A stretch of 64,000 nucleotides of DNA from positions 124,001 to 188,000 of IMG/VR virus record IMGVR_UViG_3300044974_001280; one strand, given 5' to 3'. The notes beneath the pieces were generated by a model, which saw only the letters and a list, made by a program, of their open reading frames with translations, was not told the origin of the DNA and made no database searches. Shown here piece by piece: positions 2-39,512 of this stretch (positions are counted from its first letter, which is position 1; every line of letters begins with the position of its first letter). Made by a program: the position numbers and the translations under genes.

Positions 2-862
2 GAATTTTTCGAGGACGTGGATGCTGTTTTTGTGGACGAGTGTCACCATTCCAATTCAGTTTCCATCAAAAAAATTCTATCCAAATGCATGCACACGGGG
101 TGGAGATTTGGTCTAACCGGAACCTTGACCAATCGGTCTTCTGCCGATCACCTGACCATCCAGCAGTATCTGGGCCCCGTGTTGGTCGAGATCTCTCCTG
201 ATTTTCTTTTTCGGAACGACCACGCCACCCCTGTTTCTATTAAGGTTGTGATCCTCGATTGGCTAGATCAGGAGATCAAGGATAAACTTGCCCAGTTGAA
301 ATTCTCTGCCCAGAATTTAGAGGGCAACGACATCTACAACATCGAAAGAAAATTGGTGATAGAGAGTGAAAAAAGAATTTCATATATCGTTGATTTTATT
401 TCGAAAACATCCAAGAACTCCCTGGTGCTTTTTCAGTCCGTAAAGGATGAATACGGAAAGCAAATCTGGAATAGACTGAGAGAAATAGATAGTACGAAAG
501 AGGTTTTCTACGTGGATGGAGACACTGATGAAAAATTAAGGGAGGAATACAAAGAGAGAATGAAGGACGGAGAAAATAAGATTCTGGTAGCAACCTTTGG
601 TACATTTTCAACTGGAATTTCGATCAACAATCTTCATAACATTTTCTTGGTTGAATCATACAAAAGCGAGGTTTTGATCAAGCAAAGTCTGGGCAGGGGT
701 ATGAGAAAAATGGAGGGCAAGGAGAAAGTGAACGTAATCGATTTTGTGGATGACTTTTCTACTCCTAAATACCTTAACTACCTGATGAAACACGGGGACG
801 TTCGAATGCAAATTTATAAGAAAGAGAAATTCAAATACAAAGTCTTCAAGGTTAAATTGTGA
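2..862 (+). CDS. uvsW: UvsW-like SF2 DNA helicase (5' truncated by window)
   Basis: DECH Walker B, GLTGT motif III, TFSTGI motif V, QSLGRGMR motif VI; T4 UvsW-like layout; frame open from base 2. Confidence 0.85.
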   Translation, partial: EFFEDVDAVFVDECHHSNSVSIKKILSKCMHTGWRFGLTGTLTNRSSADHLTIQQYLGPVLVEISPDFLFRNDHATPVSIKVVILDWLDQEIKDKLAQLKFSAQNLEGNDIYNIERKLVIESEKRISYIVDFISKTSKNSLVLFQSVKDEYGKQIWNRLREIDSTKEVFYVDGDTDEKLREEYKERMKDGENKILVATFGTFSTGISINNLHNIFLVESYKSEVLIKQSLGRGMRKMEGKEKVNVIDFVDDFSTPKYLNYLMKHGDVRMQIYKKEKFKYKVFKVKL

Positions 863-871
863 ACAAGTTGG

Positions 872-879
872 GATATATA
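872..879 (+). promoter_or_regulatory. GATATATA putative late promoter
   Basis: Recurrent intergenic octamer, 18 nt upstream of ATG 898. Confidence 0.7.
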
Positions 880-897
880 AATCAAAAAATCAGATTT

Positions 898-1452
898 ATG
901 ACTCCCAGATTAAAAAACTTTTCCATGTTTTCTGAGGCAATAAACAGAGAAAGAAGCAGGTTTAGATCCAATTTTGATAAAGAGGACGATTGGAGTAAGT
1001 TCGAAGAAATAGAGAGAAGGATAGAGGATCGATATTCAAGAAAAGAATCGGAAACGGGAATTGGTGAATTTTCAGATTCGGGAGCCAGAGCAAGATTTCA
1101 AGCTATGGCAGAAGATCCGAGTGGAGCTCCGCTAAGATTGGTCCGAATGGGCCTGTCCCTTGTTCAGAAGGTGGCTAAATCTATTGTTGATGTTTTTAAA
1201 ATGCCTTTTAGAGGTGGGGATTCTCTGGAGAGTCTTAAGAGACAAAAGAAAGATATGCTAGAAAAATGGGGTGAAACCATTACAAAAAGTGGCAGAAACA
1301 CAAGAGAAGACTATGAGGATTTCTATAGTAGAGCCTACGATAGTGGCAGAAGAACATTTGGAGATGATTTTGATCTAGATTCTCCCAGCTCTGAAGAAGG
1401 CAGGGTGTATTCAAGTTACATTAAAGGGGCCAGAAGATTTTACGATATTTGA
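898..1452 (+). CDS. Hypothetical protein with capsid-targeting-like N-terminus
   Basis: Starts MTPRLKNFSMFSE, downstream of GATATATA. Confidence 0.65.
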   Translation: MTPRLKNFSMFSEAINRERSRFRSNFDKEDDWSKFEEIERRIEDRYSRKESETGIGEFSDSGARARFQAMAEDPSGAPLRLVRMGLSLVQKVAKSIVDVFKMPFRGGDSLESLKRQKKDMLEKWGETITKSGRNTREDYEDFYSRAYDSGRRTFGDDFDLDSPSSEEGRVYSSYIKGARRFYDI

Positions 1453-1454
1453 GC

Positions 1455-2387
1455 ATGATTTATACCTACACACAATATATGGAATTAAATGAAGGAGGGG
1501 CTGCTATTGGCAGTTCTAGAAAGATCCGAGAGGATGAAGTGGCCAAAACTTTGACCCACTTAGGGGAAGCCCTTTTTCCCTTGCTGGGCGATGGAAAATT
1601 AAACAGGGACTTTTTGCTCATTGGCAGCATTGGAAAAAAAGAAAGTCCAGATGACACTTCCGGGGACGTGGATTTGGGAGTTTCTAAACCCTTCCTGGCC
1701 CAAAAATGGGGTGTTCCTGAATCCAAGGTGTTGGATGTAATGACCGAGAAACTGAAGGACCAACTCCCCGACATTTTGGGTTACAAACCGGAGATCAAAA
1801 TGTTTAAAGGGATCAACATAGTCAGCGTTGAATGGCCCATTGAGGGGAACATCAAGAACGGCACGGTTCAACTTGATCTGATTCCAATTGCGGATATGGA
1901 TTGGGCTAAATTTATTTTTTACTCCCCGGACCAGAGAAAAAAAGAATCCAAGTATAAATCTGCCCACAGGAATTGGCTTTTCCAGGCCATTCTTTCGGCC
2001 TTGAAGGATGTAGATTCCGTTGATAAAGAAGGGCAAATCATGGATTATACTGGGTATGTTCTCAAACTAGGAGATGGCGTTTATAAGAATCGTAAGACCT
2101 ATCGGGGAGCAACAAAAAGACTCTCCCGACCTAAAATTTTAGAAGATAGCACCTTTCTAGTCACCAGGGATCCTCAAAAGATGCTAGATCTACTTTTTGG
2201 TTCTGGTGTTAGACCGAGTGATGTTAAGACCTTCGAGGATGTCTGGTCTTTAATAAAAAAACCGACTTTTATCCATGCCGATAAACTACAATCTATAGTG
2301 GAAGATTTTGTCAGATACTTAGAGAGAACCAATCACGACATTCCTTGGGAAATAAAAAAACTGGTTAGTAATGAACGTTTTCCCTAA
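1455..2387 (+). CDS. Pol-beta superfamily nucleotidyltransferase-like protein
   Basis: LIGSIGKK...SGDVDL (GS...DxD) and a third Asp in VQLDL; N-terminus MIYTYTQYMELNE. Confidence 0.6.
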   Translation: MIYTYTQYMELNEGGAAIGSSRKIREDEVAKTLTHLGEALFPLLGDGKLNRDFLLIGSIGKKESPDDTSGDVDLGVSKPFLAQKWGVPESKVLDVMTEKLKDQLPDILGYKPEIKMFKGINIVSVEWPIEGNIKNGTVQLDLIPIADMDWAKFIFYSPDQRKKESKYKSAHRNWLFQAILSALKDVDSVDKEGQIMDYTGYVLKLGDGVYKNRKTYRGATKRLSRPKILEDSTFLVTRDPQKMLDLLFGSGVRPSDVKTFEDVWSLIKKPTFIHADKLQSIVEDFVRYLERTNHDIPWEIKKLVSNERFP

Positions 2388-2802
2388 TCTTTTCTACACC
2401 ACTTTGGATTTCTTGCTGGAAGGAGATGGAATAGAATCCATCTTTAAACACCCCGAAGTCATTTTGTTTAGGACAGTGCTGGGTTTAAATGGTTCTGTCA
2501 TGGCCAATTCAACCGGAGATTACGAAGTTCAGATTGGAGATGAAATTATCTACACGATGGAAAAATCAGTCTACGATTTGATCAATTTTGGTTTTTCTCC
2601 TCCTCCTTTATCCGTTTATGTTCCCTTGCTCTTAATGACCTGGAACTCACCATTACATGATAAATCTAAATTAATTATTGGCAAAATTCTCAATAGTCTT
2701 CTTTTTTTGGAGTCCAGAGGATATGTTGATTTTGAACTTCAAGAATACGGTCCTTTATCTTTTTTTCCAAATTTTCCAACAAGTTTTCCTCCCCATAAAT
2801 AA
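2371..2802 (+). CDS. Hypothetical protein
   Basis: 143-aa ORF filling the operon gap. Confidence 0.55.
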   Translation: MNVFPNLFYTTLDFLLEGDGIESIFKHPEVILFRTVLGLNGSVMANSTGDYEVQIGDEIIYTMEKSVYDLINFGFSPPPLSVYVPLLLMTWNSPLHDKSKLIIGKILNSLLFLESRGYVDFELQEYGPLSFFPNFPTSFPPHK

Positions 2803-2810
2803 TTCATACC

Positions 2811-4760
2811 ATGTCTGGCATTAATCATCTATACGATCTTTACCACAAAAAAGGAGAAAATTTTATCAATTCTCTTTTCAGGGAATTTGTTACCATCAAT
2901 GAAAAGATGGATGGTTCTGCCTTTAGTTTCGAGAGGGATCAAGAGACTGGGAATTTCAAATTTTATCGGCGGGATCAAAGGAATCCAATTACCCTAGTTG
3001 ACCGTACTTTGATGAAATACTATGAGAAACCTATTTCTTATATCACGAGTCTTCCCCCTCACATTATAGAGAGAATCCCCAGAGGCTGGAGATTTGGCCT
3101 AGAGTATTTCGCCAACACCCAGCCAGTTGAAATAGTCTATGATCGGGTGCCCAAAAATAATCTGATTCTTTCTTACATTCATCAAATGGCGCCGGGAGGC
3201 AAAGTCGCCAGAACCCTTCAAAAGAAAGAAAAGCTGGACGAATGGGCTGATCTTTTGGGAGTGGAAAGAAGTCCTATTATTTTTCAGGGCCTGCTTCAGC
3301 CCGATCAAAAAGTTGCCTTGATGGAATTTTTGTCTACCCCCTTCAAAGAGCTAACCCGAAAATTTTCCACTCAAAGTTTCGTGAGGTTTATCATCTCGGT
3401 CCTTAACCCAGCTTTAGAGAAAACTGCTCTGAACGATAACCTGGATAAAGATGTGGAGGGAATCGTGTTTAGGTTTGGTCATCCGGATAGAGAAAGCGAA
3501 ACAGTTTTAGCCAAGATGGTTGATCCCATCTTCACGGAGTTGGCCAAGGAAAAGACCCAACAACAGATGGAAAGAAAACCCAGTGATTTTCTGGGTCTGA
3601 CCCTTTTGGACGTTATGAACTACATTCTCCAAAAGGGGGTAAAATCTTTCGAAACAGAAGGGGATTCTGAGGAGGAAAGATACATCTCCTATATGTCGGA
3701 CGTGTTTGCCAAGTTTCTGAGTCAGTACTCGGAGAAGTATAAAGGCACTGATTTTGATGAACCTGATTATCTGAAGAAAGAAGAATTCAGATTGAACAAA
3801 CAACTCATTTCGGACAGGAGAGTTCTAAAATGGGTCGAAGAAGACCCGGCCTTTGAGTCCTTGTTCAAGTTGATGCTCAATTCATTCAGAAAAATCAAGA
3901 CTCGAGCTTCGGGACTGGTAAAAGCCGGTACTTTAGAACAATTCAATCTACTAGTTCAGAAAATCAAAAATTATGTGGCCAAGAAAAAAATCAACGAGCA
4001 AGAAAAACAAGATTTTACGAGCTTCCTCGAATTCAAGAAAATAAATTCTCCTTCCGTAGATTATCTCAGAGAAGAACTTGATGACAATGAAGAGGAAGAA
4101 AATCCTCTCTTTTCCTTCGACGAATTCATTTCCAAGTTAGAGACCATCGATCAAAAACACGAAGAATACCTAGAGCAACGGGAAGAAAACACGGTTGAAG
4201 AAGCAGAAGAAAAATCTACGGGGAAAAAGGAGGAGAAAAACATCAATGTGATGCTCGGACGATTCCAACCTTTCCATCTGGGACATTTGAAGATGGCCCA
4301 AGAGATGAAGAAAAAAAACGATTTTCCTGTTTTTGTTGTGGTCGTTTATCCAGGTCACAACAGAAATAAAAATTCCCCATTTAATGAAGAGATTATCAAG
4401 CAGTACATGGATTCCTTGATGGAAGCTTATCCAGAAGACTTTGCCGGTTACAAGATTGTCAAATTGGGTCTATTGGGTTCAGTTGTTAATAGATTGGTCG
4501 AAGAGGGCTACATCCCTCATCTGGTGGGATCTGGAGAAGACAGGGCGGATGATTACGGTAAACAGTTTGAGTACATTAAAAAAACAGAGCTGCACGATAA
4601 ATTACCTTCTGATTTCGCTCTTCACGTCAGTAAAAGATCCATGTCTGCCACAGAGGTGAGGACAAAATTGAAGGAAGGCAATTTTACAGCTGCCAAAAAA
4701 ATGTTACCTAAAGCTGTTTTAAACAATTACGAGATTTTGAAGTCCGCTTTGAAAGAATAA
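2811..4760 (+). CDS. RNA-ligase-like nucleotidyltransferase fused to an HxGH cytidylyltransferase/NMNAT-like domain
   Basis: EKMDGS (KxDG motif I), EGIVFR (IV), LAKMV (V); acidic linker; C-terminal GRFQPFHLGH and SATEVR. Confidence 0.65.
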   Translation: MSGINHLYDLYHKKGENFINSLFREFVTINEKMDGSAFSFERDQETGNFKFYRRDQRNPITLVDRTLMKYYEKPISYITSLPPHIIERIPRGWRFGLEYFANTQPVEIVYDRVPKNNLILSYIHQMAPGGKVARTLQKKEKLDEWADLLGVERSPIIFQGLLQPDQKVALMEFLSTPFKELTRKFSTQSFVRFIISVLNPALEKTALNDNLDKDVEGIVFRFGHPDRESETVLAKMVDPIFTELAKEKTQQQMERKPSDFLGLTLLDVMNYILQKGVKSFETEGDSEEERYISYMSDVFAKFLSQYSEKYKGTDFDEPDYLKKEEFRLNKQLISDRRVLKWVEEDPAFESLFKLMLNSFRKIKTRASGLVKAGTLEQFNLLVQKIKNYVAKKKINEQEKQDFTSFLEFKKINSPSVDYLREELDDNEEEENPLFSFDEFISKLETIDQKHEEYLEQREENTVEEAEEKSTGKKEEKNINVMLGRFQPFHLGHLKMAQEMKKKNDFPVFVVVVYPGHNRNKNSPFNEEIIKQYMDSLMEAYPEDFAGYKIVKLGLLGSVVNRLVEEGYIPHLVGSGEDRADDYGKQFEYIKKTELHDKLPSDFALHVSKRSMSATEVRTKLKEGNFTAAKKMLPKAVLNNYEILKSALKE

Positions 4761-4799
4761 AACAAAATTCTAGAGATATATAACATAAAACAATCCACA

Positions 4800-5333
4800 G
4801 TGAAAGTTATTCTTCCTTATTCTCAATTCATTACCCAGCTAAATGAAGCCGATGGGTTTGGAACCTTGCCCTTTCTCTTTAAGAAAGACGGGGATCTATG
4901 TTACTATTTTTTCCAGATAGACAAAGAAAAAGGAGACCAGCAAGGTTATGTTTTTTTGATTGGCAAATACTCCAGATTTGAAAATATGGAGGGTCCAAAA
5001 AATTCTTATGCCGTCATTAATCTCAACCAGATCGAGCCCGAGGTGATCGAAGACATTGCAATTGAGAACACCAAGAATTTACCCGAAGCTAACTCCAATA
5101 AATTTAAACTTAAGGGAGGAGAATTGGCGAGGCTCTACAAGCAGATTGGCAAATGTCTTTTGAATTACTTGGAGAAAAACCCAAAAACAATCAGAATAGT
5201 GGATGAGATGAATCAAAATCTAGTTCTGAATAACTACGAGGAGTACGCTAGATCTATGTTAATTTCGATCCTAGGTGATGAATGGCATTTGCAACCCGGA
5301 TCTAGAAAAGGAGTTTACGTCTTGAATCGCTAG
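4800..5333 (+). CDS. Hypothetical protein with capsid-targeting-like N-terminus
   Basis: MKVILPYSQFITQLNE; GATATATA at 4775-4782. Confidence 0.65.
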   Translation: MKVILPYSQFITQLNEADGFGTLPFLFKKDGDLCYYFFQIDKEKGDQQGYVFLIGKYSRFENMEGPKNSYAVINLNQIEPEVIEDIAIENTKNLPEANSNKFKLKGGELARLYKQIGKCLLNYLEKNPKTIRIVDEMNQNLVLNNYEEYARSMLISILGDEWHLQPGSRKGVYVLNR

Positions 5334-5340
5334 TTTTGAT

Positions 5341-5368
5341 GAAACTTTTTCTTATACTATTCTATAAT
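5341..5368 (+). promoter_or_regulatory. GAAAC-N17-TATAAT putative early/middle promoter
   Basis: Member of a recurrent GAAA(C/T)-N17/18-TAnAA class. Confidence 0.55.
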
Positions 5369-5386
5369 AAATAAAAATTATCTATT

Positions 5387-5566
5387 ATGGAAGCTTTTCA
5401 AGAAATTAAAAATCTCATCTCTCAAATTGAACCTGAATTCCAGAAATTCACTGAAAAAGGAAATAAAGCCGCTGGTACTCGGGTAAGAGTTGCAATGCAA
5501 GAACTGAAAAAACTTGCCCAGCAGATCAGAATTGATATACAAGATCAAAAATCCAAGGCAGCTTAG
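5387..5566 (+). CDS. Histone H1-like Hc1 family protein (59 aa, absent from ORF track)
   Basis: Translates MEAFQEIKNLISQIEPEFQKFTEKGNKAAGTRVRVAMQELKKLAQQIRIDIQDQKSKAA; KGNKAAGTR signature; promoter before, terminator after. Confidence 0.8.
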   Translation: MEAFQEIKNLISQIEPEFQKFTEKGNKAAGTRVRVAMQELKKLAQQIRIDIQDQKSKAA

Positions 5567-5586
5567 AATTTTCTTCTTTATTTTAG

Positions 5587-5611
5587 AAAGCAGTCTTCGG
5601 ACTGCTTTTTT
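5587..5611 (+). terminator. Rho-independent terminator
   Basis: AAAGCAGTC-TTCG-GACTGCTTT followed by T run. Confidence 0.85.
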
Positions 5612-5649
5612 GTGGTACATCATTTGGATATATACAAAAAAAAAATTCT

Positions 5650-6993
5650 ATGAACTCTATTATTAAATTCTCTGATTATATTTTAGAAGAAGAAATGAGT
5701 CGAAAGGAGAGGAGACTGCAAAGAAGGGAAGAAAGATTAGAAAAAAAACTCGATAAAATCGGAAAAAAAAGAGGAGGGGATTCTCCAGTCCTGGGTGATC
5801 AAGAAGAAAGCCAAAAACGTTTGAGTACGCCCTTTTATCAAATTAAGGGCAAAGAATTACCTATGGAGCAAAAAATCGACATTAACGGTCAAAGTGTTGA
5901 ACCATACGGGATAGCAAACAATGTTATGAATACCTGGATCGAAGAAGTCAAAACTGAAACCCTAGACAACATCGATTCCAAATATAAAGTGGCTATTAAG
6001 GCTCTAATCGAAAGGTCACTCAATAAGATTTTTCCTATAGTGTCTAAGTACTTTATTCCGTCTGTCAAATTTGATGGTAAGCCTATTATTGAAGAAACTA
6101 AAATCGAGCCTAAAGAATTTTGGCTCCAGGTTTGGCCCCAAATCTGGAAAGAAATGAATGCAGTAGAAAGGGGGATTGTTAAAAGTATGACCTCCTTAAG
6201 AGAAGAAACTACCTATGACCAATTGATAGAAATGGTGGGTAAGGCTTTATCGGATGAGGAATTCTCAGGATACAATGAAGTTGTGTCCGAACAATTATCG
6301 AACTTATTGGAACTTTTTGGCTTGGCTTTTTCTACGACTTTCAAAGACAAGGCAGTGGAAGTTTCCCAAGAAATGATGGGAAAATTGGTCACGGATCTAA
6401 ATGCAAAAGGAGCAAAAATCAATTTCAAGTCCTCTCAAAAATCTAAAGGGGGTCAGCAAGAATTGGAAAATGTTGACCTTGGCAAATCATCAAAAGAAGT
6501 TTGGGCCGAAACAATCGTTAAACAAATAGAAGAATTCAGAAAACTTTTAACTTCAGAAGAAGATAATAAAGGAGAAAAAGATCAAAAATATAAAGAAGAA
6601 GAAGAAGTAAAAGATATAAAATTTCCTTCGTCAATCAAAACAAAGGAAGATTTGAAAAAATGGGCTTCCAGTTTAAGCTCCGATCAAAAACAAGTTCTAT
6701 TGGGTGCCTTGGGATTTAGTGAAGTTAAAAAAGAAGACTCAGAAGGAAAGGACTCGGGAGGATCTGGATCCGTCCAGTCAGCAGGCAGCGGAGGAAAAGA
6801 AGTCTTAAAAAGAGGAATGAAGTCTGAGGAGGTCGGTAAACTCCAGGATGCATTGGGCATGACAAATTTAGGAACCCAAAGAACTAATTTTGGTCCTAAA
6901 ACTGAACAGGCTGTTAAGGAATTTCAAAGGAAAAAAGGTTTGGTGGATGATGGAATAGTGGGACCTAAAACTAGAGAGAAACTTGGAATATAA
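5650..6993 (+). CDS. Protein with C-terminal peptidoglycan-binding domain
   Basis: LKRGMKSEEVGKLQDALG...FGPKTEQAVKEFQRKKGLVDDGIVGPKT; N-terminus MNSIIKFSDYILEE; GATATATA 5627-5634. Confidence 0.75.
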   Translation: MNSIIKFSDYILEEEMSRKERRLQRREERLEKKLDKIGKKRGGDSPVLGDQEESQKRLSTPFYQIKGKELPMEQKIDINGQSVEPYGIANNVMNTWIEEVKTETLDNIDSKYKVAIKALIERSLNKIFPIVSKYFIPSVKFDGKPIIEETKIEPKEFWLQVWPQIWKEMNAVERGIVKSMTSLREETTYDQLIEMVGKALSDEEFSGYNEVVSEQLSNLLELFGLAFSTTFKDKAVEVSQEMMGKLVTDLNAKGAKINFKSSQKSKGGQQELENVDLGKSSKEVWAETIVKQIEEFRKLLTSEEDNKGEKDQKYKEEEEVKDIKFPSSIKTKEDLKKWASSLSSDQKQVLLGALGFSEVKKEDSEGKDSGGSGSVQSAGSGGKEVLKRGMKSEEVGKLQDALGMTNLGTQRTNFGPKTEQAVKEFQRKKGLVDDGIVGPKTREKLGI

Positions 6994-10335: not shown

Positions 10336-10728
10336 ATGAGAGAAAGACTTATTCAAGAAGATTATGTAGAAGAACCCTGGAGAATGCTGGTCTGCTGCAT
10401 TCTTCTTAACCAGACCTCAAACCAGCAAGTCCGAAAAGTGCTCCCTGACGTTTTTTCTTTCGTGCCCGATCCTGACACTGCCGTAAATTGTGATGTTGAT
10501 CAGCTGATTCAGTTGATCAAAAGCACCGGCTTTTCTCGGGTCAAAGCCCAAAGAATTATTCAGATGAGCCACAAATGGCTAGAGGGGTTTCATCAAGTTT
10601 CAGAACTGCCAGGTGTGGGCAGATATGCCCACGACTCCTGGAAAATTTTCATCCAAAAAATGAGAGATCTAGAGGTGACCGATAAAAAATTGGCCAAGTT
10701 TTTAGAGGAGGTTCGGTTGGATATATAA
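10336..10728 (+). CDS. MBD4-like HhH-GPD DNA glycosylase
   Basis: LIQE...PWRMLVCCILLNQT, HhH LPGVGRYAHDSWKIF, DKKL. Confidence 0.8.
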   Translation: MRERLIQEDYVEEPWRMLVCCILLNQTSNQQVRKVLPDVFSFVPDPDTAVNCDVDQLIQLIKSTGFSRVKAQRIIQMSHKWLEGFHQVSELPGVGRYAHDSWKIFIQKMRDLEVTDKKLAKFLEEVRLDI

Positions 10729-10731
10729 GAG

Positions 10732-12429
10732 GTGGGCAATGTCATTAAATCCCAGATAGTTACCAGGGACACCAAAAATTTACTCAACTACACAACTTGG
10801 GTAGCTGGGAATAGCTCAGCTACTGGTTTCTCCAGAAATGGCGGGGCAGCAGAGAATCTACTGGTAAACGGTCTGGACCCTTGGGGCAACGAAACGGTTT
10901 TGTGGTTGTCACTACCCGACGGAGGTGGAAATGATGACGGAGGTTGGAACACGACAAATTTTTCTATAGATCACACTAAGCTCTATCGTTTTTCTGTGTG
11001 GGTAAAAAGGACAGTGTATGTGGAGGGTCGGTTCTATTTTGGAACAAATGGATTTGGTTCTACTAATGGAGTTTTAAGTCGTTCCACCGGAACAAACAAC
11101 ACTAACCCCTATTTTTGGACGTCGTCTGATCCGCCAACTACAGCCGAGATGCCTAACAGCACCTGGATTTTAGTGGTTGGACACGTTTGGCCATCTGGAT
11201 CGGGGACTGGAGCTAACAAACCAGAATCTGGCAGATATACTATTGGCTTGGGTAGATATGCTGGTATTTCTCTAGATTTCGTCTGGCGAACAGAATCTAC
11301 CCAGGCTAGACACAGAACTTATCTATACTATGCAGAGAGCAACTTACCTAGACAATATTGGTGTTACCCTAGAGTCGATATTGTAGATGGAACCGAGCCT
11401 ACCATAGCCCAATTATTGGGCGGATATGGCGCTTTGTCTTCTGTCTCTCTCCAAAAAAGCAATTTTTTATTAGGCCCTTCGGATACTGTTTCCTATTATG
11501 AAACATCACAGGGTGGGTATTGGAACGGTATCCTTCCGGCTTCCGGTGGTTACACGATTTATCTGGGTAATCCTGCCACAGCGGGGGCTTCTGCCTCACC
11601 CCCTGTTATTTACACTGCATCAAGCGGTAATGATTTAGTGACTGTGTCTGGCGTTGTGTTCAGAAATACTTTTAGTTCAGCCAGCGACGTATTGAGCTGG
11701 GCTGCTCCTCAGAACGACATTCTGATCGTTAACCGAGAATACGAGCCGATAGTTACTTCCGGTTTGGTACTAAATCTAGATGCGGGATTTACCCCTTCTT
11801 ATCCCACGACTGGAACAACCTGGTACGATCTGAGTGGGAATGGATTTAATGGCACTTTAGTTAACTCTCCAACTTATTCTTCGAATGAAGGAGGAATAAT
11901 CACATTCGATGGGATCAATGACTACGTGGAAATAGCGGACGCGACAAGTTTGAATTTTGGAACCGGAGGTTTTACAATTCTTATGTGGGTGGGTGGAATA
12001 CCTTCTTATCCTGGTTCCGCTAAAACTATAATTAGAAAGGGAAGCAGATTCGACGGTAACGTGGCGGGATGGTCTATTGTATGGGCGGGAAGTCCTCAGG
12101 ATTTGTATTTTATTATCAGCAGTTCTACGGCAAGACTGGAAGGAAGAACAAGTCCAAATGGTGGTTTGAACGGCTGGAGTGGATATAAATTAATTGGTGT
12201 CCAAAGAAGTGGAACCAATTGGAATCAAATCAACAACACCACAGTTACAACTTTAGGAACATTTAGCGGAGATGTAAACAACACATTGCCGATCACAATT
12301 TCATACAATTCACAGTATGCGTCATATCTAAATCAACAGGTTGGTATGACCTTGATTTACAATAGAGCTCTTAGCTCAGCTGAAATTACACAAGTTTACA
12401 ATGCCACAAAAGCCAGATATGGCTTATAA
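10732..12429 (+). CDS. Virion-associated lectin-like (LamG/ConA) domain protein
   Basis: G/T/S-rich; IVTSGLVLNLDAG...WYDLSGNG...FDGINDYV...IYNRALS..EI..VYNATKARYGL; GATATATA 4 nt upstream. Confidence 0.75.
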   Translation: MGNVIKSQIVTRDTKNLLNYTTWVAGNSSATGFSRNGGAAENLLVNGLDPWGNETVLWLSLPDGGGNDDGGWNTTNFSIDHTKLYRFSVWVKRTVYVEGRFYFGTNGFGSTNGVLSRSTGTNNTNPYFWTSSDPPTTAEMPNSTWILVVGHVWPSGSGTGANKPESGRYTIGLGRYAGISLDFVWRTESTQARHRTYLYYAESNLPRQYWCYPRVDIVDGTEPTIAQLLGGYGALSSVSLQKSNFLLGPSDTVSYYETSQGGYWNGILPASGGYTIYLGNPATAGASASPPVIYTASSGNDLVTVSGVVFRNTFSSASDVLSWAAPQNDILIVNREYEPIVTSGLVLNLDAGFTPSYPTTGTTWYDLSGNGFNGTLVNSPTYSSNEGGIITFDGINDYVEIADATSLNFGTGGFTILMWVGGIPSYPGSAKTIIRKGSRFDGNVAGWSIVWAGSPQDLYFIISSSTARLEGRTSPNGGLNGWSGYKLIGVQRSGTNWNQINNTTVTTLGTFSGDVNNTLPITISYNSQYASYLNQQVGMTLIYNRALSSAEITQVYNATKARYGL

Positions 12430-12433
12430 CTCT

Positions 12434-12760
12434 CTATTTACTTTCCGTTTTGGCCTTGCCAGATAGAGTCTCATGAATTCTCTGTTTTACGTACTTTAGC
12501 ACTTTCTTAGAATCTTTGTGGTCTTTTGAAAGCATTTTTTGAAATTCTTCTTCCTCTGCTAACTCGTCTAGATACGAATACAAGTCAGTTGTGTTGTAGA
12601 GATCGTCAACTACCTGGGGCATCTGAGTGTAGGCTGGACGATAATTTCTGGAGTTAACGTTGTCTTTATACCAATCACCTGGCACTACCACACTCCCTGG
12701 AGCGAAGGCGCTCCAGCTTTCGGATAAAAATTTTTTGAAACTTTTAATACGGGGGGTCAT
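12434..12760 (-). CDS. Hypothetical protein with capsid-targeting-like N-terminus
   Basis: Probable start MTPRIKSFKKFLSE at 12760, GATATATA on minus strand at 12766-12773. Confidence 0.65.
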   Translation of the reverse strand: MTPRIKSFKKFLSESWSAFAPGSVVVPGDWYKDNVNSRNYRPAYTQMPQVVDDLYNTTDLYSYLDELAEEEEFQKMLSKDHKDSKKVLKYVKQRIHETLSGKAKTESK

Positions 12761-12806
12761 ATGTGTATATATCCAACTGGAGAAGACAAAAATTGACTTC
12801 GTAATT

Positions 12807-14210
12807 ATGATCATTGATATAGAAAATAAAGGGACTGGTTTAACGGTCTCTACTTTTTCAAAGGAGGGGAATGTTGAATTTGTCAACATTGAAATTCCTG
12901 AGGAAGAAAGATTCGTGTGGGAAATTTGTTCAGCTAGCGATAGGGCCAGAGACACTGTTTGGAAAAATTGGGACGGCAAGCCCATCAAGAAAGTCAAAAA
13001 TCAAAAGTACGACAAATACCGAATAGTTCAACTGTTAGAAGAGAGTGATCGGGATCTAACTGCACCTCTTTGGGAATCTCAAACCCCGAAAAAATATTTC
13101 GTGGACATTGAGGTCGAGATGACTGATGAGCTAGGTGATTCTTTGGACACCTCAAGTGCCAAAAATAGGGTCTTGTCGATCGGTATTGCCACTGACAGAT
13201 GTAAACTGATTGTGTTGGGTTTGGATGAGTTAACCCCCGAGGCACAGGCACAGATTCATGAAGAAGTGAACACCTACCTCGGCAAGATGGGTGATGAATG
13301 GTCTTTCAGATACATGAAATTCGAGTCCGAGTATGATATGATGTACACTTTTTTCAAAGACATTGGAGCCAAAATGTCTCTGATCACCGGCTGGAACTGG
13401 TTTGGTTACGACTGGCCCTATTTGCTTAATCGAGCCAAAAGGCTGGGCATCGATCCCAAGATCATGTCACCCTCTAAATATCTCATCGGTCAGAACCAAA
13501 TTCCGGTTCACTTGCAGATGGTCGACTATCTGGAAATCTACAAAAAATGGGATAGGGTTATCAAAATCAAAGAAAGTAATCGACTGGATTATGTGGCAGA
13601 AAAGGCAACGGGTCTCAAGAAAATTCACTATGATGGCTCTCTCCGAACCTTGTACCAATCAGATTTCAAAAAGTTTATTCTTTACAACGCCATTGACTGT
13701 GCCCTGGTCCATTACATCGATAAAAAATTGGGCACTCTCCTGACTTATTTTAAGATTGCCTGTCTCAACGGGGTCGAGATCGGCAGGGCTTTATCCCCTG
13801 TTTGGTCTACGGAAGTCATTATGCTCCGAAAATTCTTGGCTCGGAAGCAAGTTTTTGTAAATCTCCGCAAAGAAGAAAACCACATCAAATTCACGGGTGG
13901 CTATGTCAAAGAACCCATCCAGGGTCTGCACGAATGGGTTGCCTGTTACGACTTTGCTTCCCTATATCCGAACACAATAGTTCAGTGGGGTCTGTCCCCA
14001 GAAGTTTTCAAGGGTAAGAACATATCTCACTCCCAGGACTCCTGGACCAAAACCTCTTCAGGTTCGTTCTTTGGAGGTGACGACGAGGAGCCCATTCTGA
14101 AATCGATCATTAAAGATCTCTATGCCCAGAGAAGATCGACCAAAGATAAAATGTTGCAATTGCAGATTGAAATTGACAAAATAGAGAAACAATTAAAAAA
14201 CTTAACGTAG
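12807..14210 (+). CDS. Family B DNA polymerase, N-terminal subunit (3'-5' exonuclease, motif A, first fingers helix)
   Basis: ExoI VDIEV, ExoII GWNWFGYDWPY, ExoIII YNAID, GGYV, DFASLYP; ends before motif B. Confidence 0.9.
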   Translation: MIIDIENKGTGLTVSTFSKEGNVEFVNIEIPEEERFVWEICSASDRARDTVWKNWDGKPIKKVKNQKYDKYRIVQLLEESDRDLTAPLWESQTPKKYFVDIEVEMTDELGDSLDTSSAKNRVLSIGIATDRCKLIVLGLDELTPEAQAQIHEEVNTYLGKMGDEWSFRYMKFESEYDMMYTFFKDIGAKMSLITGWNWFGYDWPYLLNRAKRLGIDPKIMSPSKYLIGQNQIPVHLQMVDYLEIYKKWDRVIKIKESNRLDYVAEKATGLKKIHYDGSLRTLYQSDFKKFILYNAIDCALVHYIDKKLGTLLTYFKIACLNGVEIGRALSPVWSTEVIMLRKFLARKQVFVNLRKEENHIKFTGGYVKEPIQGLHEWVACYDFASLYPNTIVQWGLSPEVFKGKNISHSQDSWTKTSSGSFFGGDDEEPILKSIIKDLYAQRRSTKDKMLQLQIEIDKIEKQLKNLT

Positions 14211-17864: not shown

Positions 17865-18497
17865 ATGGATTTAGTTAAGAATTTCTCAGATTTTTTAATA
17901 GAAAGAGAATTGCCGGATTCTCAAGGAAAAATTCTAGTTGTGATGGGACCTCCGGGATCAGGTAAAGGAACTTTTTCCGAAAAACTGGCAGATAGGCAAG
18001 GCTTCCACCACATTTCAACCGGAGAATTGCTCAGGAAATCAAAAAACCCGGAGATCAAGAAAAAAGTTGAACGGGGTGATTTCATCGACGATCAGACAGT
18101 TGTAAAGATGATCCGGAGGGAACTGAAGAAAATTGATCCTGATGATGGGATCATTATTGACGGATTCCCCCGGACCGTTAAACAAGCCTCTCTGTTAGAT
18201 TCTTTGCTCGGAAAAATGGGCTTGGGCCTGAGCCACACCATCTATCTGGATATAGACGAAGAAACGGCCAAAGGCAGAATTACTGCCAGGGCGGAAAGAG
18301 AAGACCGGAAGGACGACAAAGATCCAGAGGTGGTGGCTAAAAGATTCAGAGACTATGAAGAAAAAACTGCACCCCTGATTGATCTCTACACAAAAAACAG
18401 AAAACTGAAAAAATATAATGCCGCCAAAGGTAGCGAGAGCGTTTACAAGAAGATCGTGAAGGCCTTAGAACTAAACCGGACCCCTGATTCAGAATAA
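17865..18497 (+). CDS. adk: Adenylate kinase with capsid-targeting-like N-terminal extension
   Basis: GPPGSGKGT, HISTGELLR, DGFPRT, short LID R.DD; N-terminus MDLVKNFSDFLIE. Confidence 0.9.
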   Translation: MDLVKNFSDFLIERELPDSQGKILVVMGPPGSGKGTFSEKLADRQGFHHISTGELLRKSKNPEIKKKVERGDFIDDQTVVKMIRRELKKIDPDDGIIIDGFPRTVKQASLLDSLLGKMGLGLSHTIYLDIDEETAKGRITARAEREDRKDDKDPEVVAKRFRDYEEKTAPLIDLYTKNRKLKKYNAAKGSESVYKKIVKALELNRTPDSE

Positions 18498-23038: not shown

Positions 23039-24142
23039 CTAGACAATCCCGTCCTTCCAGGGATCGACGTAGCCCAATTTGGTCTTCAGGGCCTTAATGA
23101 CCCGAAGCTGCTCAGGACTGAGTCTCTGTTCGATCTCCTGTCTCTGCTCCTCCCAGCCTGACTTATCCCAGAGGTCTGCCAGCTGCAGGAGCACCTGGCC
23201 GTCTTTCTTCAGGTCTCCCTTCAGTTTCTGCAGCCAGAAGCCGGCATCGAACATGGGCAGGGTCACAATCAGGCTCCGGGCTTCGCTATCTCCAGTGGCC
23301 AGAATCTTGGTCCAGCCCAGGGGATTCCATGCCCCACTTTGGAGTGTGAAAGAGTCGCACCGGAGAATCCCACCCACCGTCTGTGGTGCCCCGACCAGGG
23401 AGGTCAGCCGGTTATTGTCGCAGTAGAAATTCCCACCCACCGTCTGAGGTGCCCCGGCCAGGGTCGTCAGCTGGTTGTAGGAACAGGAGAAATACCCATC
23501 CACCGTCTGGGGTGCCCCTGCCAGGGAGGTCAGCTGGTTGCCGGAACAGGAGAAATTCCCACCCACCTTCTGGGGTGCCCCTGACAGGGAGGTCAGCTGG
23601 TTTCTGGAACAGGAGAAATACCCACCCACCGTCTGAGGTGCCCCGACCAGGGTCGTCAGCTGGTTGTAGGAACAGAAGAAATGCCCATCCATCGTCTGAG
23701 GTGCCCCGGCCAGGGTCGTCAGCTGGTTGTAGGAACAGTCTAAATCCCCATCCACCGTCTGGGGTGCCCCGACCAGGGTCGTCAGCCGGTTGCCGCCACA
23801 GTAAAAATGCCCATCCACCGTCTGAGGTGCCCCGACCAGAGAGGTCAGCTGGTTTCTGAAACAGGAGAAATCCCCACTCACCTTCTGGGGTGCCCCTGCC
23901 AGGGAGGTCAGCTGGTTGACGGAACAGTAGAAATTCCCACTGACATGTCCGAACGAGATGCCCTGTAAGCTCTTTAATCTTTTACCCCCACAAGCAAAAC
24001 TTCCCTTTACATCCACTAGCCCTGTCTCTGGGTTGACCGACCAGGTCCCTTGCGTGTATTTGGTCAGGAAAGTCTTTTGCTTTTGGGTCAGATCTGAAGT
24101 CTTCCGGGCTTCGAACAGGGAAAAGGATTGGAGGTGTTTCAC
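23039..24142 (-). CDS. LRR-like repeat protein, paralog 1 (9 modules of 21 aa)
   Basis: Modules xFxCxxNxLT(S/T)LxGAPQ(T/K)VxG; GTG start 5 nt after GATATATA (24148-24155). Confidence 0.85.
   Translation of the reverse strand: MKHLQSFSLFEARKTSDLTQKQKTFLTKYTQGTWSVNPETGLVDVKGSFACGGKRLKSLQGISFGHVSGNFYCSVNQLTSLAGAPQKVSGDFSCFRNQLTSLVGAPQTVDGHFYCGGNRLTTLVGAPQTVDGDLDCSYNQLTTLAGAPQTMDGHFFCSYNQLTTLVGAPQTVGGYFSCSRNQLTSLSGAPQKVGGNFSCSGNQLTSLAGAPQTVDGYFSCSYNQLTTLAGAPQTVGGNFYCDNNRLTSLVGAPQTVGGILRCDSFTLQSGAWNPLGWTKILATGDSEARSLIVTLPMFDAGFWLQKLKGDLKKDGQVLLQLADLWDKSGWEEQRQEIEQRLSPEQLRVIKALKTKLGYVDPWKDGIV
23369..23935 (-). repeat. Nine tandem 63-bp coding repeats
   Basis: Recurrent ...caccgtctg(a/g)ggtgcccc...cagg...gtcagc unit. 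Confidence 0.9.
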
Positions 24143-24156
24143 GCCCTTATATATCT

Positions 24157-24939: not shown

Positions 24940-24952
24940 GCCTTATATATCT

Positions 24953-39500: not shown

Positions 39501-39512
39501 AGATATATATCT
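39501..39512. promoter_or_regulatory. Palindromic bidirectional GATATATA promoter
   Basis: AGATATATATCT perfect palindrome between divergent genes. Confidence 0.65.

What the first reader, a model, noticed from the sequence alone, without database searches (positions are those of the whole stretch)
1455..4760. Operon of three different nucleotidyl-transfer chemistries, apparently virion-targeted
Seen: a Pol-beta-type NTase (GS...DxD...D) and, two genes on, a fusion of an ATP-dependent ligase-type domain (KxDG) with an HxGH NMNAT/cytidylyltransferase-type domain. All lie downstream of GATATATA 872 and carry targeting-like peptides (N-terminal, or FTSFLEF and LFSFDEF in the acidic linker beside INE, a possible cleavage site separating the domains). 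Established: phages counter tRNA-cleaving and NAD-depleting defences with RNA ligases, CCA-type NTases and NAD-rebuilding enzymes. Inference: an injected RNA-repair, NAD-restoring or protein-nucleotidylating counter-defence module.
Basis: partly seen in the sequence, partly recalled or inferred. Interest (0 to 1): 0.6.

Follow-up and report, generated by a model that had tools for sequence, protein, structure and literature searches.

The report
Capsid-targeted nucleic-acid repair enzyme operon
A freshwater T4-like jumbo phage has a late operon encoding a DNA-polymerase-X-like nucleotidyltransferase and an RNA-ligase/NMNAT-like fusion, and their T4-style capsid-targeting peptides suggest the enzymes are packed into the head and injected with the DNA.

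Summary
Window 872-4760 is one tightly packed four-gene unit (gA 898-1452, gB 1455-2387, gC 2371-2802, gD 2811-4760). It lies between two copies of GATATATA, a promoter-like octamer found 20 times in the window against 1.3 expected.

- **gB** is a Pol-beta-superfamily NTase with invariant GS, DxD and D. Its model matches family X DNA polymerases best, over palm plus thumb.
- **gD** has an N-module with the T4 Rnl2 RNA-ligase fold and an intact KxDG. An acidic linker follows, then a HIGH-signature adenylyltransferase domain (GRFQPFHLGH, SATEVR) closest to archaeal/NadM NMNAT and to PPAT.
- **The phage** has a gp23-type capsid protein and a gp21-type (S77) prohead protease.
- **The leader peptides** resemble the T4 capsid targeting sequence. 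They open 28 of 284 ORFs (7.8 expected), are usually followed by [LIV]xE, and go with the promoter motif. The Lak-phage homologue of gB lacks the leader.

Virion targeting is plausible but unproven. A 3'-end extension plus nick-sealing role is the best guess. NAD rebuilding lacks partner genes, and nothing points to protein nucleotidylation. Both of gD's catalytic motifs have decayed in part of its wider family.

The parts
872..879 (+). GATATATA, a late-promoter-like octamer that opens the unit
   Evidence: The window has 20 copies against 1.26 expected. In the genome the motif lies 1-40 nt before start codons, including those of the protease and other structural genes. It holds the same position before the gA homologue in L011, L016 and L017.
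898..1452 (+). gA: 184-aa charged protein of unknown fold. Its N-terminus has the leader-like motif (LKNFSMF).
   Evidence: ORF. No family hit. Homologues of 160-175 aa hold the same position in L011, L016 and L017, and the L011 one starts with a leader ending in LNE.
1455..1493 (+). Leader peptide of gB (residues 1-13), ending in LNE, the predicted prohead-protease cut site
   Evidence: E13, G14 and G15 are invariant, and the aromatic pattern is kept while the other residues vary. pLDDT is low for residues 1-20. The Lak-B2 homologue starts at the equivalent of residue ~14 and has no leader.
1455..2387 (+). gB: Pol-beta-superfamily nucleotidyltransferase with a family-X-polymerase-like palm plus thumb
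   Evidence: Model pLDDT 89.7. Foldseek's top PDB matches are Leishmania pol beta and pol lambda (E 4e-4 and up). In VIA-align, ASFV PolX scores Z 9.4 with 162 of 176 residues aligned, and pol beta, TdT and pol lambda score Z 8.8-9.4 with 160-190 residues. Other NTases align over about 100 residues only. G57, S58, D71, D73 and D141 are invariant.
2371..2802 (+). gC: 143-aa protein of unknown function, with a possible leader (LDFLLE then G). It is dispensable in some relatives.
   Evidence: ORF. No family or atlas lead. Present in L011, L012 and L017 but absent in L016.
2811..3998 (+). gD N-module (residues 1-396): Rnl2-like RNA-ligase adenylyltransferase domain plus a helical domain. Motif I is EKMDG at residues 31-35.
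   Evidence: Model pLDDT 87.9. Foldseek puts T4 Rnl2 first (E 1e-7), with every RNA ligase ahead of every DNA ligase. VIA-align gives Z 11.5 for Rnl2, 11.3 for NgrRnl and 7-8 for DNA ligases. Pfam RNA_ligase scores 16.7 bits here (cut-off 27) but 29.3 and 27.0 bits in two relatives. hhalign places K32 on Rnl2 K35.
3999..4202 (+). Acidic linker of gD (residues 397-464). It holds two leader-like motifs, FTSFLEF (402-408) and LFSFDEF (433-439), between candidate cut sites INE (394-396) and VEE (462-464).
   Evidence: Positions. The region is disordered in the model. Both motifs and both flanking [IV]xE sites are kept in the 66%-identical L011 homologue, although the rest of the linker differs. 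An aromatic motif ends the N-module in 96 of 135 family representatives, against 14% of background windows.
4203..4760 (+). gD C-domain (residues 465-649): HIGH-signature adenylyl/cytidylyltransferase with GRFQPFHLGH and SATEVR
   Evidence: Pfam CTP_transf_like scores 26 bits (cut-off 21). TIGR00125 scores 35.1 bits (cut-off 27.7). PHROG 3041 and 395 are cytidyltransferase families. The family profile's best PDB matches are MJ0541 NMNAT (3.6e-6), PPAT (8e-6) and NadM (1.9e-5).
4775..4782 (+). Next GATATATA, which opens the following gene (4800-5333, also leader-bearing) and so marks the end of the unit
   Evidence: L011 and L017 have the same arrangement.

Best explanation
This is a late-transcribed operon of a freshwater, T4-like-headed jumbo phage. 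It encodes cargo enzymes that are loaded into the prohead and injected with the DNA.

Transcription starts at GATATATA (872) and runs through gA, gB, gC and gD.

gB and gA carry short N-terminal leaders built like the T4 capsid targeting sequence: an aromatic motif followed by [LIV]xE. gD carries two such motifs in its acidic linker. The leaders would take the proteins into the scaffolding core. The gp21-type prohead protease would then cut after the Glu. That would remove residues 1-13 of gB and excise the gD linker, giving a free Rnl2-like ligase (about residues 1-396) and a free HIGH-type adenylyltransferase (about 465-649).

After injection the enzymes would act as an end-repair kit. The PolX-like NTase would extend or fill 3'-OH ends. 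The RNA-type ligase would seal 3'-OH/5'-phosphate nicks, in RNA or at ribonucleotide-containing nicks in DNA. The adenylyltransferase would handle the adenylate cofactor, most likely NMN + ATP <-> NAD+ + PPi.

Shown here: the folds, the catalytic motifs, the promoter motif, the leader statistics and the conserved gene order. Inferred: packaging, cleavage, substrates and the timing of action.
For: Operon:
- The gene junctions are a 2-nt gap, a 17-nt overlap and an 8-nt gap.
- GATATATA flanks the unit.
- The order helicase-gA-gB-(gC)-gD, with GATATATA before gA, is kept in four relatives at 49-66% identity.
- Metatranscriptome contigs bridge the gA/gB and gC/gD junctions. This is weak evidence, because DNA carry-over is not excluded.

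Enzymes.

T4-like head machinery: Gp23 family 2.4e-39 and Peptidase_S77 3.8e-8.

Leaders:
- 28 ORFs carry one against 7.8 expected.
- [LIV]xE follows in 15 of the 28.
- They are linked to the promoter motif.
- They cluster in the head-gene region and in this window.
- The T4 CTS is MKTYQEFIAE. It is 10 aa, N-terminal and removed by gp21 (PMC8442874; PMC10229621).
- The leader is an add-on. Lak-B2 gB starts at the predicted mature end. The leader-bearing adenylate kinase has about 20 extra residues before its ADK domain.

Precedent for a Pol-beta NTase working with RNA ligases: the RlaP family (PMC7824862; bioRxiv 10.64898/2025.12.29.696909).
Against: - There is no proteomic or biochemical evidence for packaging, cleavage or activity.
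- gD has no N-terminal leader. An internal targeting signal has no T4 precedent that I could find.
- In the gD family the motif I lysine is missing in 25 of 138 representatives. The HIGH motif is lost in about half of the long members. Eight lack both. The family's conserved role may therefore not be catalytic.
- Motif V seems to keep only one of its two lysines.
- gB has no sequence-level match to any PolX or RlaP model, and its structural Z of about 9 is moderate.
- The genome already has Rnl1-like, Rnl5-like, cREC and HAD repair genes elsewhere. The end-healing enzymes among them carry no leader.
- No NAD-salvage partner gene was found.
- The complex prediction of gB with the protease-scaffold protein gave no answer.
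Confidence: 0.45

Rival explanations
1. The unit is a DNA repair kit for the phage's own genome. The PolX-like enzyme fills gaps and the ligase seals nicks in the incoming or replicating phage DNA. It would complete the excision repair that the phage's UV-damage endonuclease starts, much as African swine fever virus uses PolX with its ligase. This differs from the best explanation only in the substrate.
For: - gB's best matches are DNA polymerases of family X over palm plus thumb, including the minimal ASFV PolX.
- The unit lies beside the gp32, UvsW-like helicase and DNA polymerase genes.
- The window encodes UvdE (27847-28773, 3.5e-46), and a relative has an HhH-GPD glycosylase nearby.
- The habitat is lake water, where UV damage is expected (my own knowledge).
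- Canonical RNA repair is already covered elsewhere in the genome.
Against: - The ligase module resembles RNA ligases (Z 10-11.5) clearly more than DNA ligases (Z 7-8).
- gB lacks the 8-kDa and helix-hairpin-helix DNA-binding parts of cellular PolX enzymes.
- gB has no sequence similarity to PolX.
- UvdE has no leader.
Confidence: 0.25
2. The unit is an NAD+-restoring counter-defence. The HIGH domain is a true NMNAT that rebuilds NAD+ after host NADase defences fire, and the other enzymes are secondary.
For: - The GxFxPxHxGH and SxTxxR signatures are intact.
- The best PDB matches include archaeal and NadM NMNATs.
- Jumbo phages are known to carry NAD+ synthesis genes with HIGH NTase domains (PMC7824862).
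Against: - No NAPRTase/Nampt match was found in the genome, and none of the proteins scanned here showed a Nudix or ribosylnicotinamide-kinase domain.
- Every NMNAT equivalog model scores far below its cut-off, for example 21 bits against 181.
- PPAT matches about as well as NMNAT.
- The HIGH motif has decayed in many family members.
- NMNAT alone cannot rebuild NAD+ from ADP-ribose and nicotinamide (established biochemistry).
Confidence: 0.12
3. The aromatic peptides are not capsid-targeting signals. They are docking motifs for a cytoplasmic partner such as the sliding clamp or another hub protein. On this reading the enzymes work late in the cytoplasm and are not packaged.
For: - Short hydrophobic or aromatic terminal peptides recruit polymerases, ligases and T4 late-transcription factors to clamps (my own knowledge, not tested here).
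- The unit lies next to replication genes.
- No packaging data exist.
Against: - The same leader is on a peptidoglycan-binding protein, three LRR proteins and several small proteins encoded beside the portal, protease and capsid genes.
- It is usually followed by [LIV]xE, the gp21-type cut site.
- It goes with the motif that also precedes structural genes.
- The F-x-x-F spacing matches the T4 CTS (Y-Q-E-F) rather than the clamp-binding motifs as I recall them.
Confidence: 0.12
4. gD is mainly a structural internal head or ejection protein descended from enzymes. On this reading its catalytic motifs are relics in this lineage.
For: - Only E31, Y110, P114 and G160 are invariant across the family.
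- The nucleophile lysine is lost in 18% of representatives.
- The HIGH motif is lost in about half of the long members, and both are lost in eight.
- The non-catalytic aromatic motif is better conserved than the active sites.
Against: In this phage and all its relatives at 60% identity or more, KxDG, EG, the motif V lysine, HxGH and SxTxxR are all intact. That argues for selection on catalysis in this clade.
Confidence: 0.08

Closest known systems
T4 internal proteins (IPI-III) and their capsid targeting sequence, processed by the gp21 prohead protease
   Same: - Both are short N-terminal leaders with aromatic residues three apart, followed by a hydrophobic residue, any residue, then Glu.
- The genome has a gp23-type capsid protein and an S77 protease.
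- The genes are late.
- The cargo proteins are diverse and share only the leader.
   Different: - The cargo here consists of enzymes of nucleotide and nucleic-acid chemistry rather than small anti-restriction proteins.
- There are about 28 candidate cargo genes.
- gD carries the motif internally, in duplicate, in a linker between two domains.
- The promoter octamer is GATATATA, not the T4 late promoter TATAAATA as I recall it.
- Packaging is not shown.
T4 RNA ligase 2 (Rnl2) and the Rnl5/REL1 nick-sealing RNA ligases
   Same: - The adenylyltransferase fold matches (Z 11-11.5 over about 190 residues).
- Motif I EKxDG aligns with Rnl2 E34-K35.
- A motif III Glu and a motif IV EG are present.
- A helical domain follows the catalytic domain.
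   Different: - Sequence similarity is below Pfam's threshold in this protein.
- The helical region is longer.
- Only one lysine is seen in motif V.
- The module is fused to a HIGH NTase.
- The nucleophile is lost in part of the family.
RlaP (PF10127), the RNA-ligase-associated Pol-beta NTase that adds 1-2 NMP to damaged RNA 3' ends
   Same: Both are Pol-beta-superfamily NTases encoded next to an RNA ligase. Both combine an NTase domain with a helical C-terminal region.
   Different: gB does not match PF10127 at all. Structurally, gB's second domain resembles the PolX thumb.
Minimal family X DNA polymerase (African swine fever virus PolX) working with the viral ligase
   Same: Palm plus thumb aligns over 162 of 176 residues (Z 9.4, rmsd 3.2). 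Both have the GS...DxD...D catalytic set, and both are paired with a ligase gene.
   Different: - Identity is 19% and there is no sequence-level signal.
- gB has about 50 extra C-terminal helical residues and an N-terminal leader.
- Its partner is an RNA-type ligase, not a DNA-type one.
- Polymerase activity is untested.
Archaeal/NadM-type NMN adenylyltransferase and PPAT (HIGH nucleotidyltransferases)
   Same: The GRFQPFHxGH signature, the SPF segment after strand 2 and the SxTxxR motif are shared. These are the best sequence matches in the PDB.
   Different: Every equivalog model scores far below its cut-off. The acceptor substrate is unknown. The domain is always fused behind the ligase module, and no NAD-salvage partner was found.

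Membership tests
Pol-beta superfamily nucleotidyltransferase (gB) | hG[GS] motif, DxD and a third carboxylate on the palm sheet | tested here: met
   G57-S58, D71-x-D73 and D141 are invariant in 47 relatives. The model has the palm fold and matches many NTases.
Family X DNA polymerase (gB) | Palm plus thumb architecture superposable on PolX enzymes | tested here: met
   The top eight VIA rows are all PolX (Z 8.8-9.4, 160-193 residues aligned), while other NTases align over about 100 residues. Foldseek's top 35 are almost all pol beta or pol lambda. Z is moderate.
Family X DNA polymerase (gB) | Sequence-level membership (PolX profile or PDB sequence match) | tested here: not met
   No Pfam, NCBIfam or PHROG hit at E <= 1. 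No PDB sequence hit with the protein or the family profile.
Family X DNA polymerase (gB) | Template-directed DNA synthesis | not testable with these tools
   Needs a primer-extension assay.
RlaP, PF10127 (gB) | Match to the family model | tested here: not met
   No hit in hmmscan. No match anywhere in the genome.
RlaP, PF10127 (gB) | Gene neighbourhood with an RNA ligase | tested here: met
   gB and the ligase-like gD are one or two genes apart in five phages.
CCA-adding / tRNA nucleotidyltransferase (gB) | Similarity beyond the shared palm (head-neck-body) | tested here: not met
   CCA enzymes align over the palm only (about 96 residues, Z 5.5-6.0) and rank below PolX and the TUTases.
Rnl2-type RNA ligase, PF09414 (gD N-module) | Covalent nucleotidyltransferase fold | tested here: met
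   T4 Rnl2 scores Foldseek E 1e-7 and VIA Z 11.5 with 196 residues aligned. RNA ligases outrank DNA ligases.
Rnl2-type RNA ligase, PF09414 (gD N-module) | Motif I KxDG with the nucleophile lysine | tested here: met
   EKMDG at residues 31-35. It aligns with Rnl2 E34-K35. In the wider family, lysine is kept in only 113 of 138.
Rnl2-type RNA ligase, PF09414 (gD N-module) | Score above the family's gathering cut-off | tested here: not met
   16.7-19 bits against a cut-off of 27 for this protein. Two relatives at 60-62% identity reach 29.3 and 27.0 bits.
Rnl2-type RNA ligase, PF09414 (gD N-module) | Motifs IV (EG) and V (KxK) | tested here: inconclusive
   VEGIVFRF and LAKMVDP lie on the expected strands. 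Only one lysine is seen in motif V. No residue-level superposition was available.
HIGH nucleotidyltransferase, PF01467 / TIGR00125 (gD C-domain) | Model match above cut-off, HxGH and ISxTxxR motifs | tested here: met
   26.0 bits against 21, and 35.1 against 27.7. H489-L-G-H492 and SATEVR at 612-617.
NMN adenylyltransferase (gD C-domain) | Equivalog-level match | tested here: not met
   TIGR01527 scores 21.1 bits against 181, and PRK01153 24.4 against 127. PPAT matches about equally well.
NMN adenylyltransferase (gD C-domain) | GxFxPx[H/T]xxH signature | tested here: met
   GRFQPFHLGH here, with the T variant in many relatives. That this is the NMNAT signature rests on my own knowledge.
Phage NAD+ reconstitution or salvage pathway | Partner enzyme (Nampt/NAPRTase) in the genome | tested here: not met
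   PF04095 finds nothing in the 85%-complete genome.
T4-type capsid-targeted cargo | N-terminal leader resembling the CTS, with a [LIV]xE cut site | tested here: met
   gB starts MIYTYTQYMELNE followed by GG, with E13 and G14 invariant. gA has LKNFSMF. Genome-wide enrichment is shown. In gD the motif is internal, not N-terminal.
T4-type capsid-targeted cargo | gp21-type protease and gp23-type capsid protein in the same genome | tested here: met
   Peptidase_S77 3.8e-8 and phrog_207 1e-37; Gp23 family 2.4e-39.
T4-type capsid-targeted cargo | Protein present in virions in processed form | not testable with these tools
   Needs virion proteomics. The complex prediction gave no answer.

The most novel reading that the evidence does not exclude
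Through T4-CTS-like leaders, this phage lineage may load its capsid with a working enzyme kit that is injected and acts in the first minute of infection. The kit would comprise the PolX-like NTase, the Rnl2-like ligase, an NMNAT-like adenylyltransferase, an adenylate kinase and an ATP-grasp ligase.

gD would be made as one chain carrying an internal double targeting signal, which the prohead protease cuts out.

The ligase and the HIGH domain would be functionally coupled. For example, the HIGH domain could run NAD+ + PPi -> NMN + ATP, or adenylylate 5'-phosphate ends. Together with the adenylate kinase, it would then feed adenylate to the ligase in energy-poor lake bacteria.
Probability: 0.2. 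Interest if true: 0.8.

Novelty: new variant of a known kind. Interest (0 to 1): 0.6.

Why it matters
- **Cargo type.** If the leaders really direct packaging, T4-type capsid targeting would carry a broad set of enzymes, not only small anti-restriction proteins. That would change how the many "hypothetical" late genes of environmental jumbo phages are read. It would also supply natural leader peptides and an internal, self-excising targeting linker for loading proteins into capsids.
- **An unrecognised family.** The ligase-plus-HIGH-NTase fusion covers 441 clusters at 50% identity, on phage contigs of up to 340 kb. Source annotations call it only "cytidyltransferase-like".
- **Phage PolX-like enzymes.** gB defines a phage clade of PolX-like enzymes with no assigned function.
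- **Testability.** Both proteins are small and have clear catalytic residues, so their activities can be assayed directly.

Tried and rejected
- **Near-identity DNA search.** Megablast of the region against cultured phages found nothing.
- **PDB sequence searches.** gB and its family profile found nothing. The gD N-module profile also found nothing. Those fold assignments therefore rest on predicted structures, and for the ligase also on borderline Pfam scores.
- **RlaP and CCA-enzyme membership of gB.** Both were rejected.
- **gB-like domain in the ~1000-aa gD relatives.** I tested whether their extra C-terminal parts are gB-like. A gB family HMM found none among 150 representatives.
- **Back-up between gD's two active sites.** I tested whether loss of the ligase lysine goes with retention of the HIGH motif. 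It does not (Fisher p 0.61), and eight representatives lack both.
- **Stand-alone relatives of the HIGH domain.** Only two short hits turned up, so nothing was learned about specificity.
- **Atlas feature searches for gA and gC.** No usable lead.
- **Sigma-70 promoter and intrinsic terminator scans of 600-5700.** Results were at or below chance.
- **Metatranscriptomes.** Three short contigs from a 95-99% identical relative lie on the unit, and two bridge gene junctions. Depth is low and DNA carry-over is not excluded.
- **Complex prediction.** gB with the protease-scaffold protein gave "no answer". This is no evidence either way.

Full report
**What is in the sequence**

The window is bases 124001-188000 of a single 230,445-bp viral contig. 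The record is rated 85% complete. Near-identical DNA occurs in about 19 lake-water metagenome runs.

The flagged region holds four tightly packed plus-strand genes:

| Gene | Coordinates | Length |
|---|---|---|
| gA | 898-1452 | 184 aa |
| gB | 1455-2387 | 310 aa |
| gC | 2371-2802 | 143 aa |
| gD | 2811-4760 | 649 aa |

The junctions between them are a 2-nt gap, a 17-nt overlap and an 8-nt gap. The unit follows the 3' end of a UvsW-like helicase gene.

**The promoter-like motif**

GATATATA lies at 872-879, 18 nt before gA, and again at 4775-4782, before the next gene. The window has 20 copies against 1.26 expected. The genome has 47, nearly all 1-40 nt upstream of start codons. These include the start codons of the prohead protease and of other large virion-module genes.

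It resembles a T4-type late promoter in that no -35 element accompanies it. That comparison is my inference. Scans for sigma-70 promoters and intrinsic terminators gave only chance-level hits.

**gB**

No sequence library recognises gB. It does have 338 metagenomic relatives.

An alignment of 47 relatives (46-93% identity) shows these residues as invariant: G57-S58, K61-K62, S69-G70-D71-x-D73, D141, and a strongly conserved block at 164-181. This is the Pol-beta NTase catalytic set.

The AlphaFold model is confident (pLDDT 89.7). Its structural matches are as follows.

- Foldseek's top PDB matches are almost all pol beta or pol lambda (E from 4e-4, about 250 columns).
- An independent all-against-representatives search puts eight family X polymerases on top (Z 8.8-9.4). 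These are ASFV PolX (162 of 176 residues aligned, rmsd 3.2 Å), Leishmania and human pol beta, TdT, Thermus PolX and pol lambda. They align over 160-193 residues, which is palm plus thumb.
- TUTases, CD-NTases, poly(A) polymerases and CCA enzymes align over only about 100 palm residues (Z 5.5-8.3).
- In viral and metagenomic structure libraries the fold recurs in uncharacterised phage proteins, for example in Agrobacterium phage Atu_ph07 (TM 0.70-0.77). Some of these are fused to PD-(D/E)xK nuclease, ParB-like or CTP_transf_like domains.

gB is therefore a PolX-like NTase, not a CCA-type one. It is not a member of RlaP (PF10127) by profile. It does share RlaP's defining neighbourhood with an RNA ligase. 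RlaP adds one or two NMPs to damaged RNA 3' ends.

**gD N-module**

Residues 1 to about 396 form a unit that recurs in 441 representative clusters at 50% identity. It always sits at the N-terminus. It occurs alone (about 400 aa), with about 200 further residues, or in proteins of about 1000 aa.

The model is confident (pLDDT 87.9). Evidence for an RNA-ligase fold:

- T4 RNA ligase 2 is Foldseek's best match (E 1e-7). Trl1, Rnl1, Rnl3, REL1 and NgrRnl follow, and DNA ligases come far behind.
- VIA-align gives Z 11.5 for Rnl2, 11.3 for NgrRnl, 10.8 for REL1 and 7-8 for DNA ligases.
- Pfam RNA_ligase is below its threshold here (16.7 bits against 27) but above it in two relatives.
- A profile-sequence alignment with T4 Rnl2 places E31-K32 on E34-K35 and E98 on E99. 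Its probability is low, but it is collinear.

Motifs IV (VEGIVFRF) and V (LAKMVDP) lie on the expected strands. Motif V shows only one lysine.

**gD C-domain**

Residues 465-649 match CTP_transf_like and TIGR00125 above their cut-offs. The domain carries GRFQPFHLGH and SATEVR. The family profile's best PDB matches are the archaeal NMNAT MJ0541 (3.6e-6), PPAT (8e-6) and NadM (1.9e-5).

No equivalog model comes near its cut-off. The genome has no NAPRTase/Nampt match. The acceptor substrate therefore remains open.

**A caveat from the wider gD family**

Across 150 representatives:

- the motif I lysine is kept in 113 of 138;
- the HIGH motif is kept in about half of the long members;
- the two losses are independent (p 0.61), and eight representatives lack both.

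In this phage and in all relatives at 60% identity or more, every motif is intact.

**The targeting idea**

The phage has a gp23-family capsid protein (2.4e-39). It also has a 676-aa protein whose N-terminus is a gp21-type S77 protease. This looks like a protease-scaffold fusion. Its capsid protein is closest to those of Lak, Tenacibaculum, Chryseobacterium and Flavobacterium phages.

The T4 capsid targeting sequence is a 10-aa N-terminal peptide, MKTYQEFIAE, which gp21 removes. The evidence that this phage has similar leaders:

- The pattern hydrophobic-x-x-[FY]-x-x-[FYW] starts within the first ten residues of 28 of 284 ORFs, against 7.8 expected (P 8e-9).
- [LIV]xE follows within 15 residues in 15 of the 28, against a 20% background (P 7e-5).
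- The pattern goes with an upstream GATATATA (odds ratio 6.5, P 5e-6).
- The bearers cluster beside the portal, protease and capsid genes, and across this window.
- The bearers include a peptidoglycan-binding protein, three LRR paralogues, an adenylate kinase and a RimK-type ATP-grasp enzyme.

gB's leader (residues 1-13) ends in LNE followed by GG. E13 and G14 are invariant, and the region has low model confidence. The Lak-B2 homologue of gB starts exactly at the equivalent of the predicted mature end and has no leader. The adenylate kinase likewise has about 20 extra residues before its domain. The leaders are therefore add-ons.

gD has no N-terminal leader; its N-terminus is part of the fold. 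Its disordered acidic linker carries two leader-like motifs:

- FTSFLEF (402-408) is preceded by INE.
- LFSFDEF (433-439) is followed by VEE.

Both motifs and both flanking sites are kept in a 66%-identical relative whose linker otherwise differs. An aromatic motif ends the N-module in 96 of 135 family representatives, against 14% of background windows.

My inference is that the protease cuts the linker out and releases two enzymes.

**Conservation of the unit**

Four related contigs, with gB or gD at 49-66% identity, keep the order gp32 ... helicase-gA-gB-(gC)-gD-gE. Each has GATATATA just before gA. gC is absent from one of them.

At greater distances the genes separate. The huge phage LR756500 has gD but no detectable gB. 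Lak phages have gB but no gD.

Short metatranscriptome contigs from a close relative cover 1345-1590, 2409-2632 and 2642-2932, and two of them bridge gene junctions. This is weak evidence.

**Function**

The phage already has a canonical RNA-repair set at genome positions 190-205 kb. It comprises an Rnl1-like ligase, an OB-plus-RNA_ligase (Rnl5-like) enzyme, two cREC domains, a HAD "Swiss army knife" phosphatase and an R2K ATP-grasp enzyme. The genome has no tRNA genes. The window also encodes the UV-damage endonuclease UvdE.

The flagged unit is therefore an additional, divergent, late-expressed set.

I commit to a 3'-end extension plus nick-sealing kit delivered with the genome, accompanied by an adenylate-handling enzyme. 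The ligase class favours RNA or ribo-terminated nicks. The PolX-like fold and the genomic context keep repair of the phage's own DNA as a strong rival. NAD rebuilding alone is weakly supported, protein nucleotidylation is unsupported, and a purely structural role remains possible.

**Verdict**

- It is a new variant of two known kinds: T4-type capsid-targeted cargo, and NTase-plus-RNA-ligase repair modules.
- Confidence in the full model is about 0.45. It is much higher for the fold assignments and the operon, and lower for packaging and substrates.
- Interest is 0.6.

Noticed in passing
window 17865-18497 (+): An adenylate kinase (Pfam ADK 1.9e-36) has about 20 extra N-terminal residues that carry the leader motif (NFSDFLIE), and GATATATA lies 4 nt before its start. 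It is a candidate packaged enzyme.
   Followed up: partly
window 37302-38768 (+): A RimK-type ATP-grasp protein (7e-33) has a leader-like N-terminus (VLNFCNFLNE) and its own GATATATA.
   Followed up: partly
window 23039-25936 (-): Three tandem paralogues (260-367 aa, with weak LRR hits) each have their own GATATATA and an identical leader (MKHLQSFSLFE). They lie in the window's most GC-rich stretch (0.55).
   Followed up: no
window 5650-6993 (+): A 447-aa protein has a leader-like N-terminus and a C-terminal peptidoglycan-binding domain (PG_binding_1, 2.6e-12). It could be an ejected cell-wall-binding protein.
   Followed up: no
window 27847-28773 (+): A UV-damage endonuclease, UvdE (3.5e-46), with no leader. 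It is relevant to the DNA-repair rival.
   Followed up: partly
L008 3686-6229 and 14774-16574 (genome 191.7-204.6 kb): A canonical RNA-repair gene set: an Rnl1-like ligase, an R2K ATP-grasp enzyme, a HAD_SAK_2 phosphatase, a cREC domain protein at L008 14774-15223 (with an apparent paralogue, judged from its near-identical N-terminus, at 10425-10874), and an OB-fold plus RNA_ligase (Rnl5-like) enzyme.
   Followed up: partly
L001 9969-10325 (genome coordinates the same): A second, small (118 aa) CTP_transf_like gene with GRWQPLHEGH. It lies in the structural-gene part of the genome.
   Followed up: no
L003 11463-13490 (genome 51463-53493): A 676-aa protein has a gp21-type protease domain at residues 12-226 and about 450 further residues. 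It lies directly before the gp23-type capsid gene, which suggests a protease-scaffold fusion.
   Followed up: partly
window 12434-14210: The ORF with the family B DNA polymerase exonuclease and the start of the polymerase domain has only 516 aa. At its 5' end it overlaps a minus-strand leader-bearing ORF that has its own GATATATA (12766-12773, minus strand). The polymerase may be split, or its start may be miscalled.
   Followed up: no
window 39502-39511: GATATATATC is a palindromic double copy of the motif. It faces two divergent genes, and the plus-strand one carries a leader.
   Followed up: no
L018 8637-14441 (T4 genome): In T4, rnlB (RNA ligase 2) lies about 3 kb from uvsW, among head genes. 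In this phage the Rnl2-like gD lies about 2 kb downstream of the UvsW-like helicase. This may be an old linkage.
   Followed up: no
window 29416-30459 (+) and 42327-44792 (-): Full-length DnaJ and ClpB-like chaperone genes are encoded by the phage. Relatives carry HSP20 and HSP70 genes near the unit.
   Followed up: no
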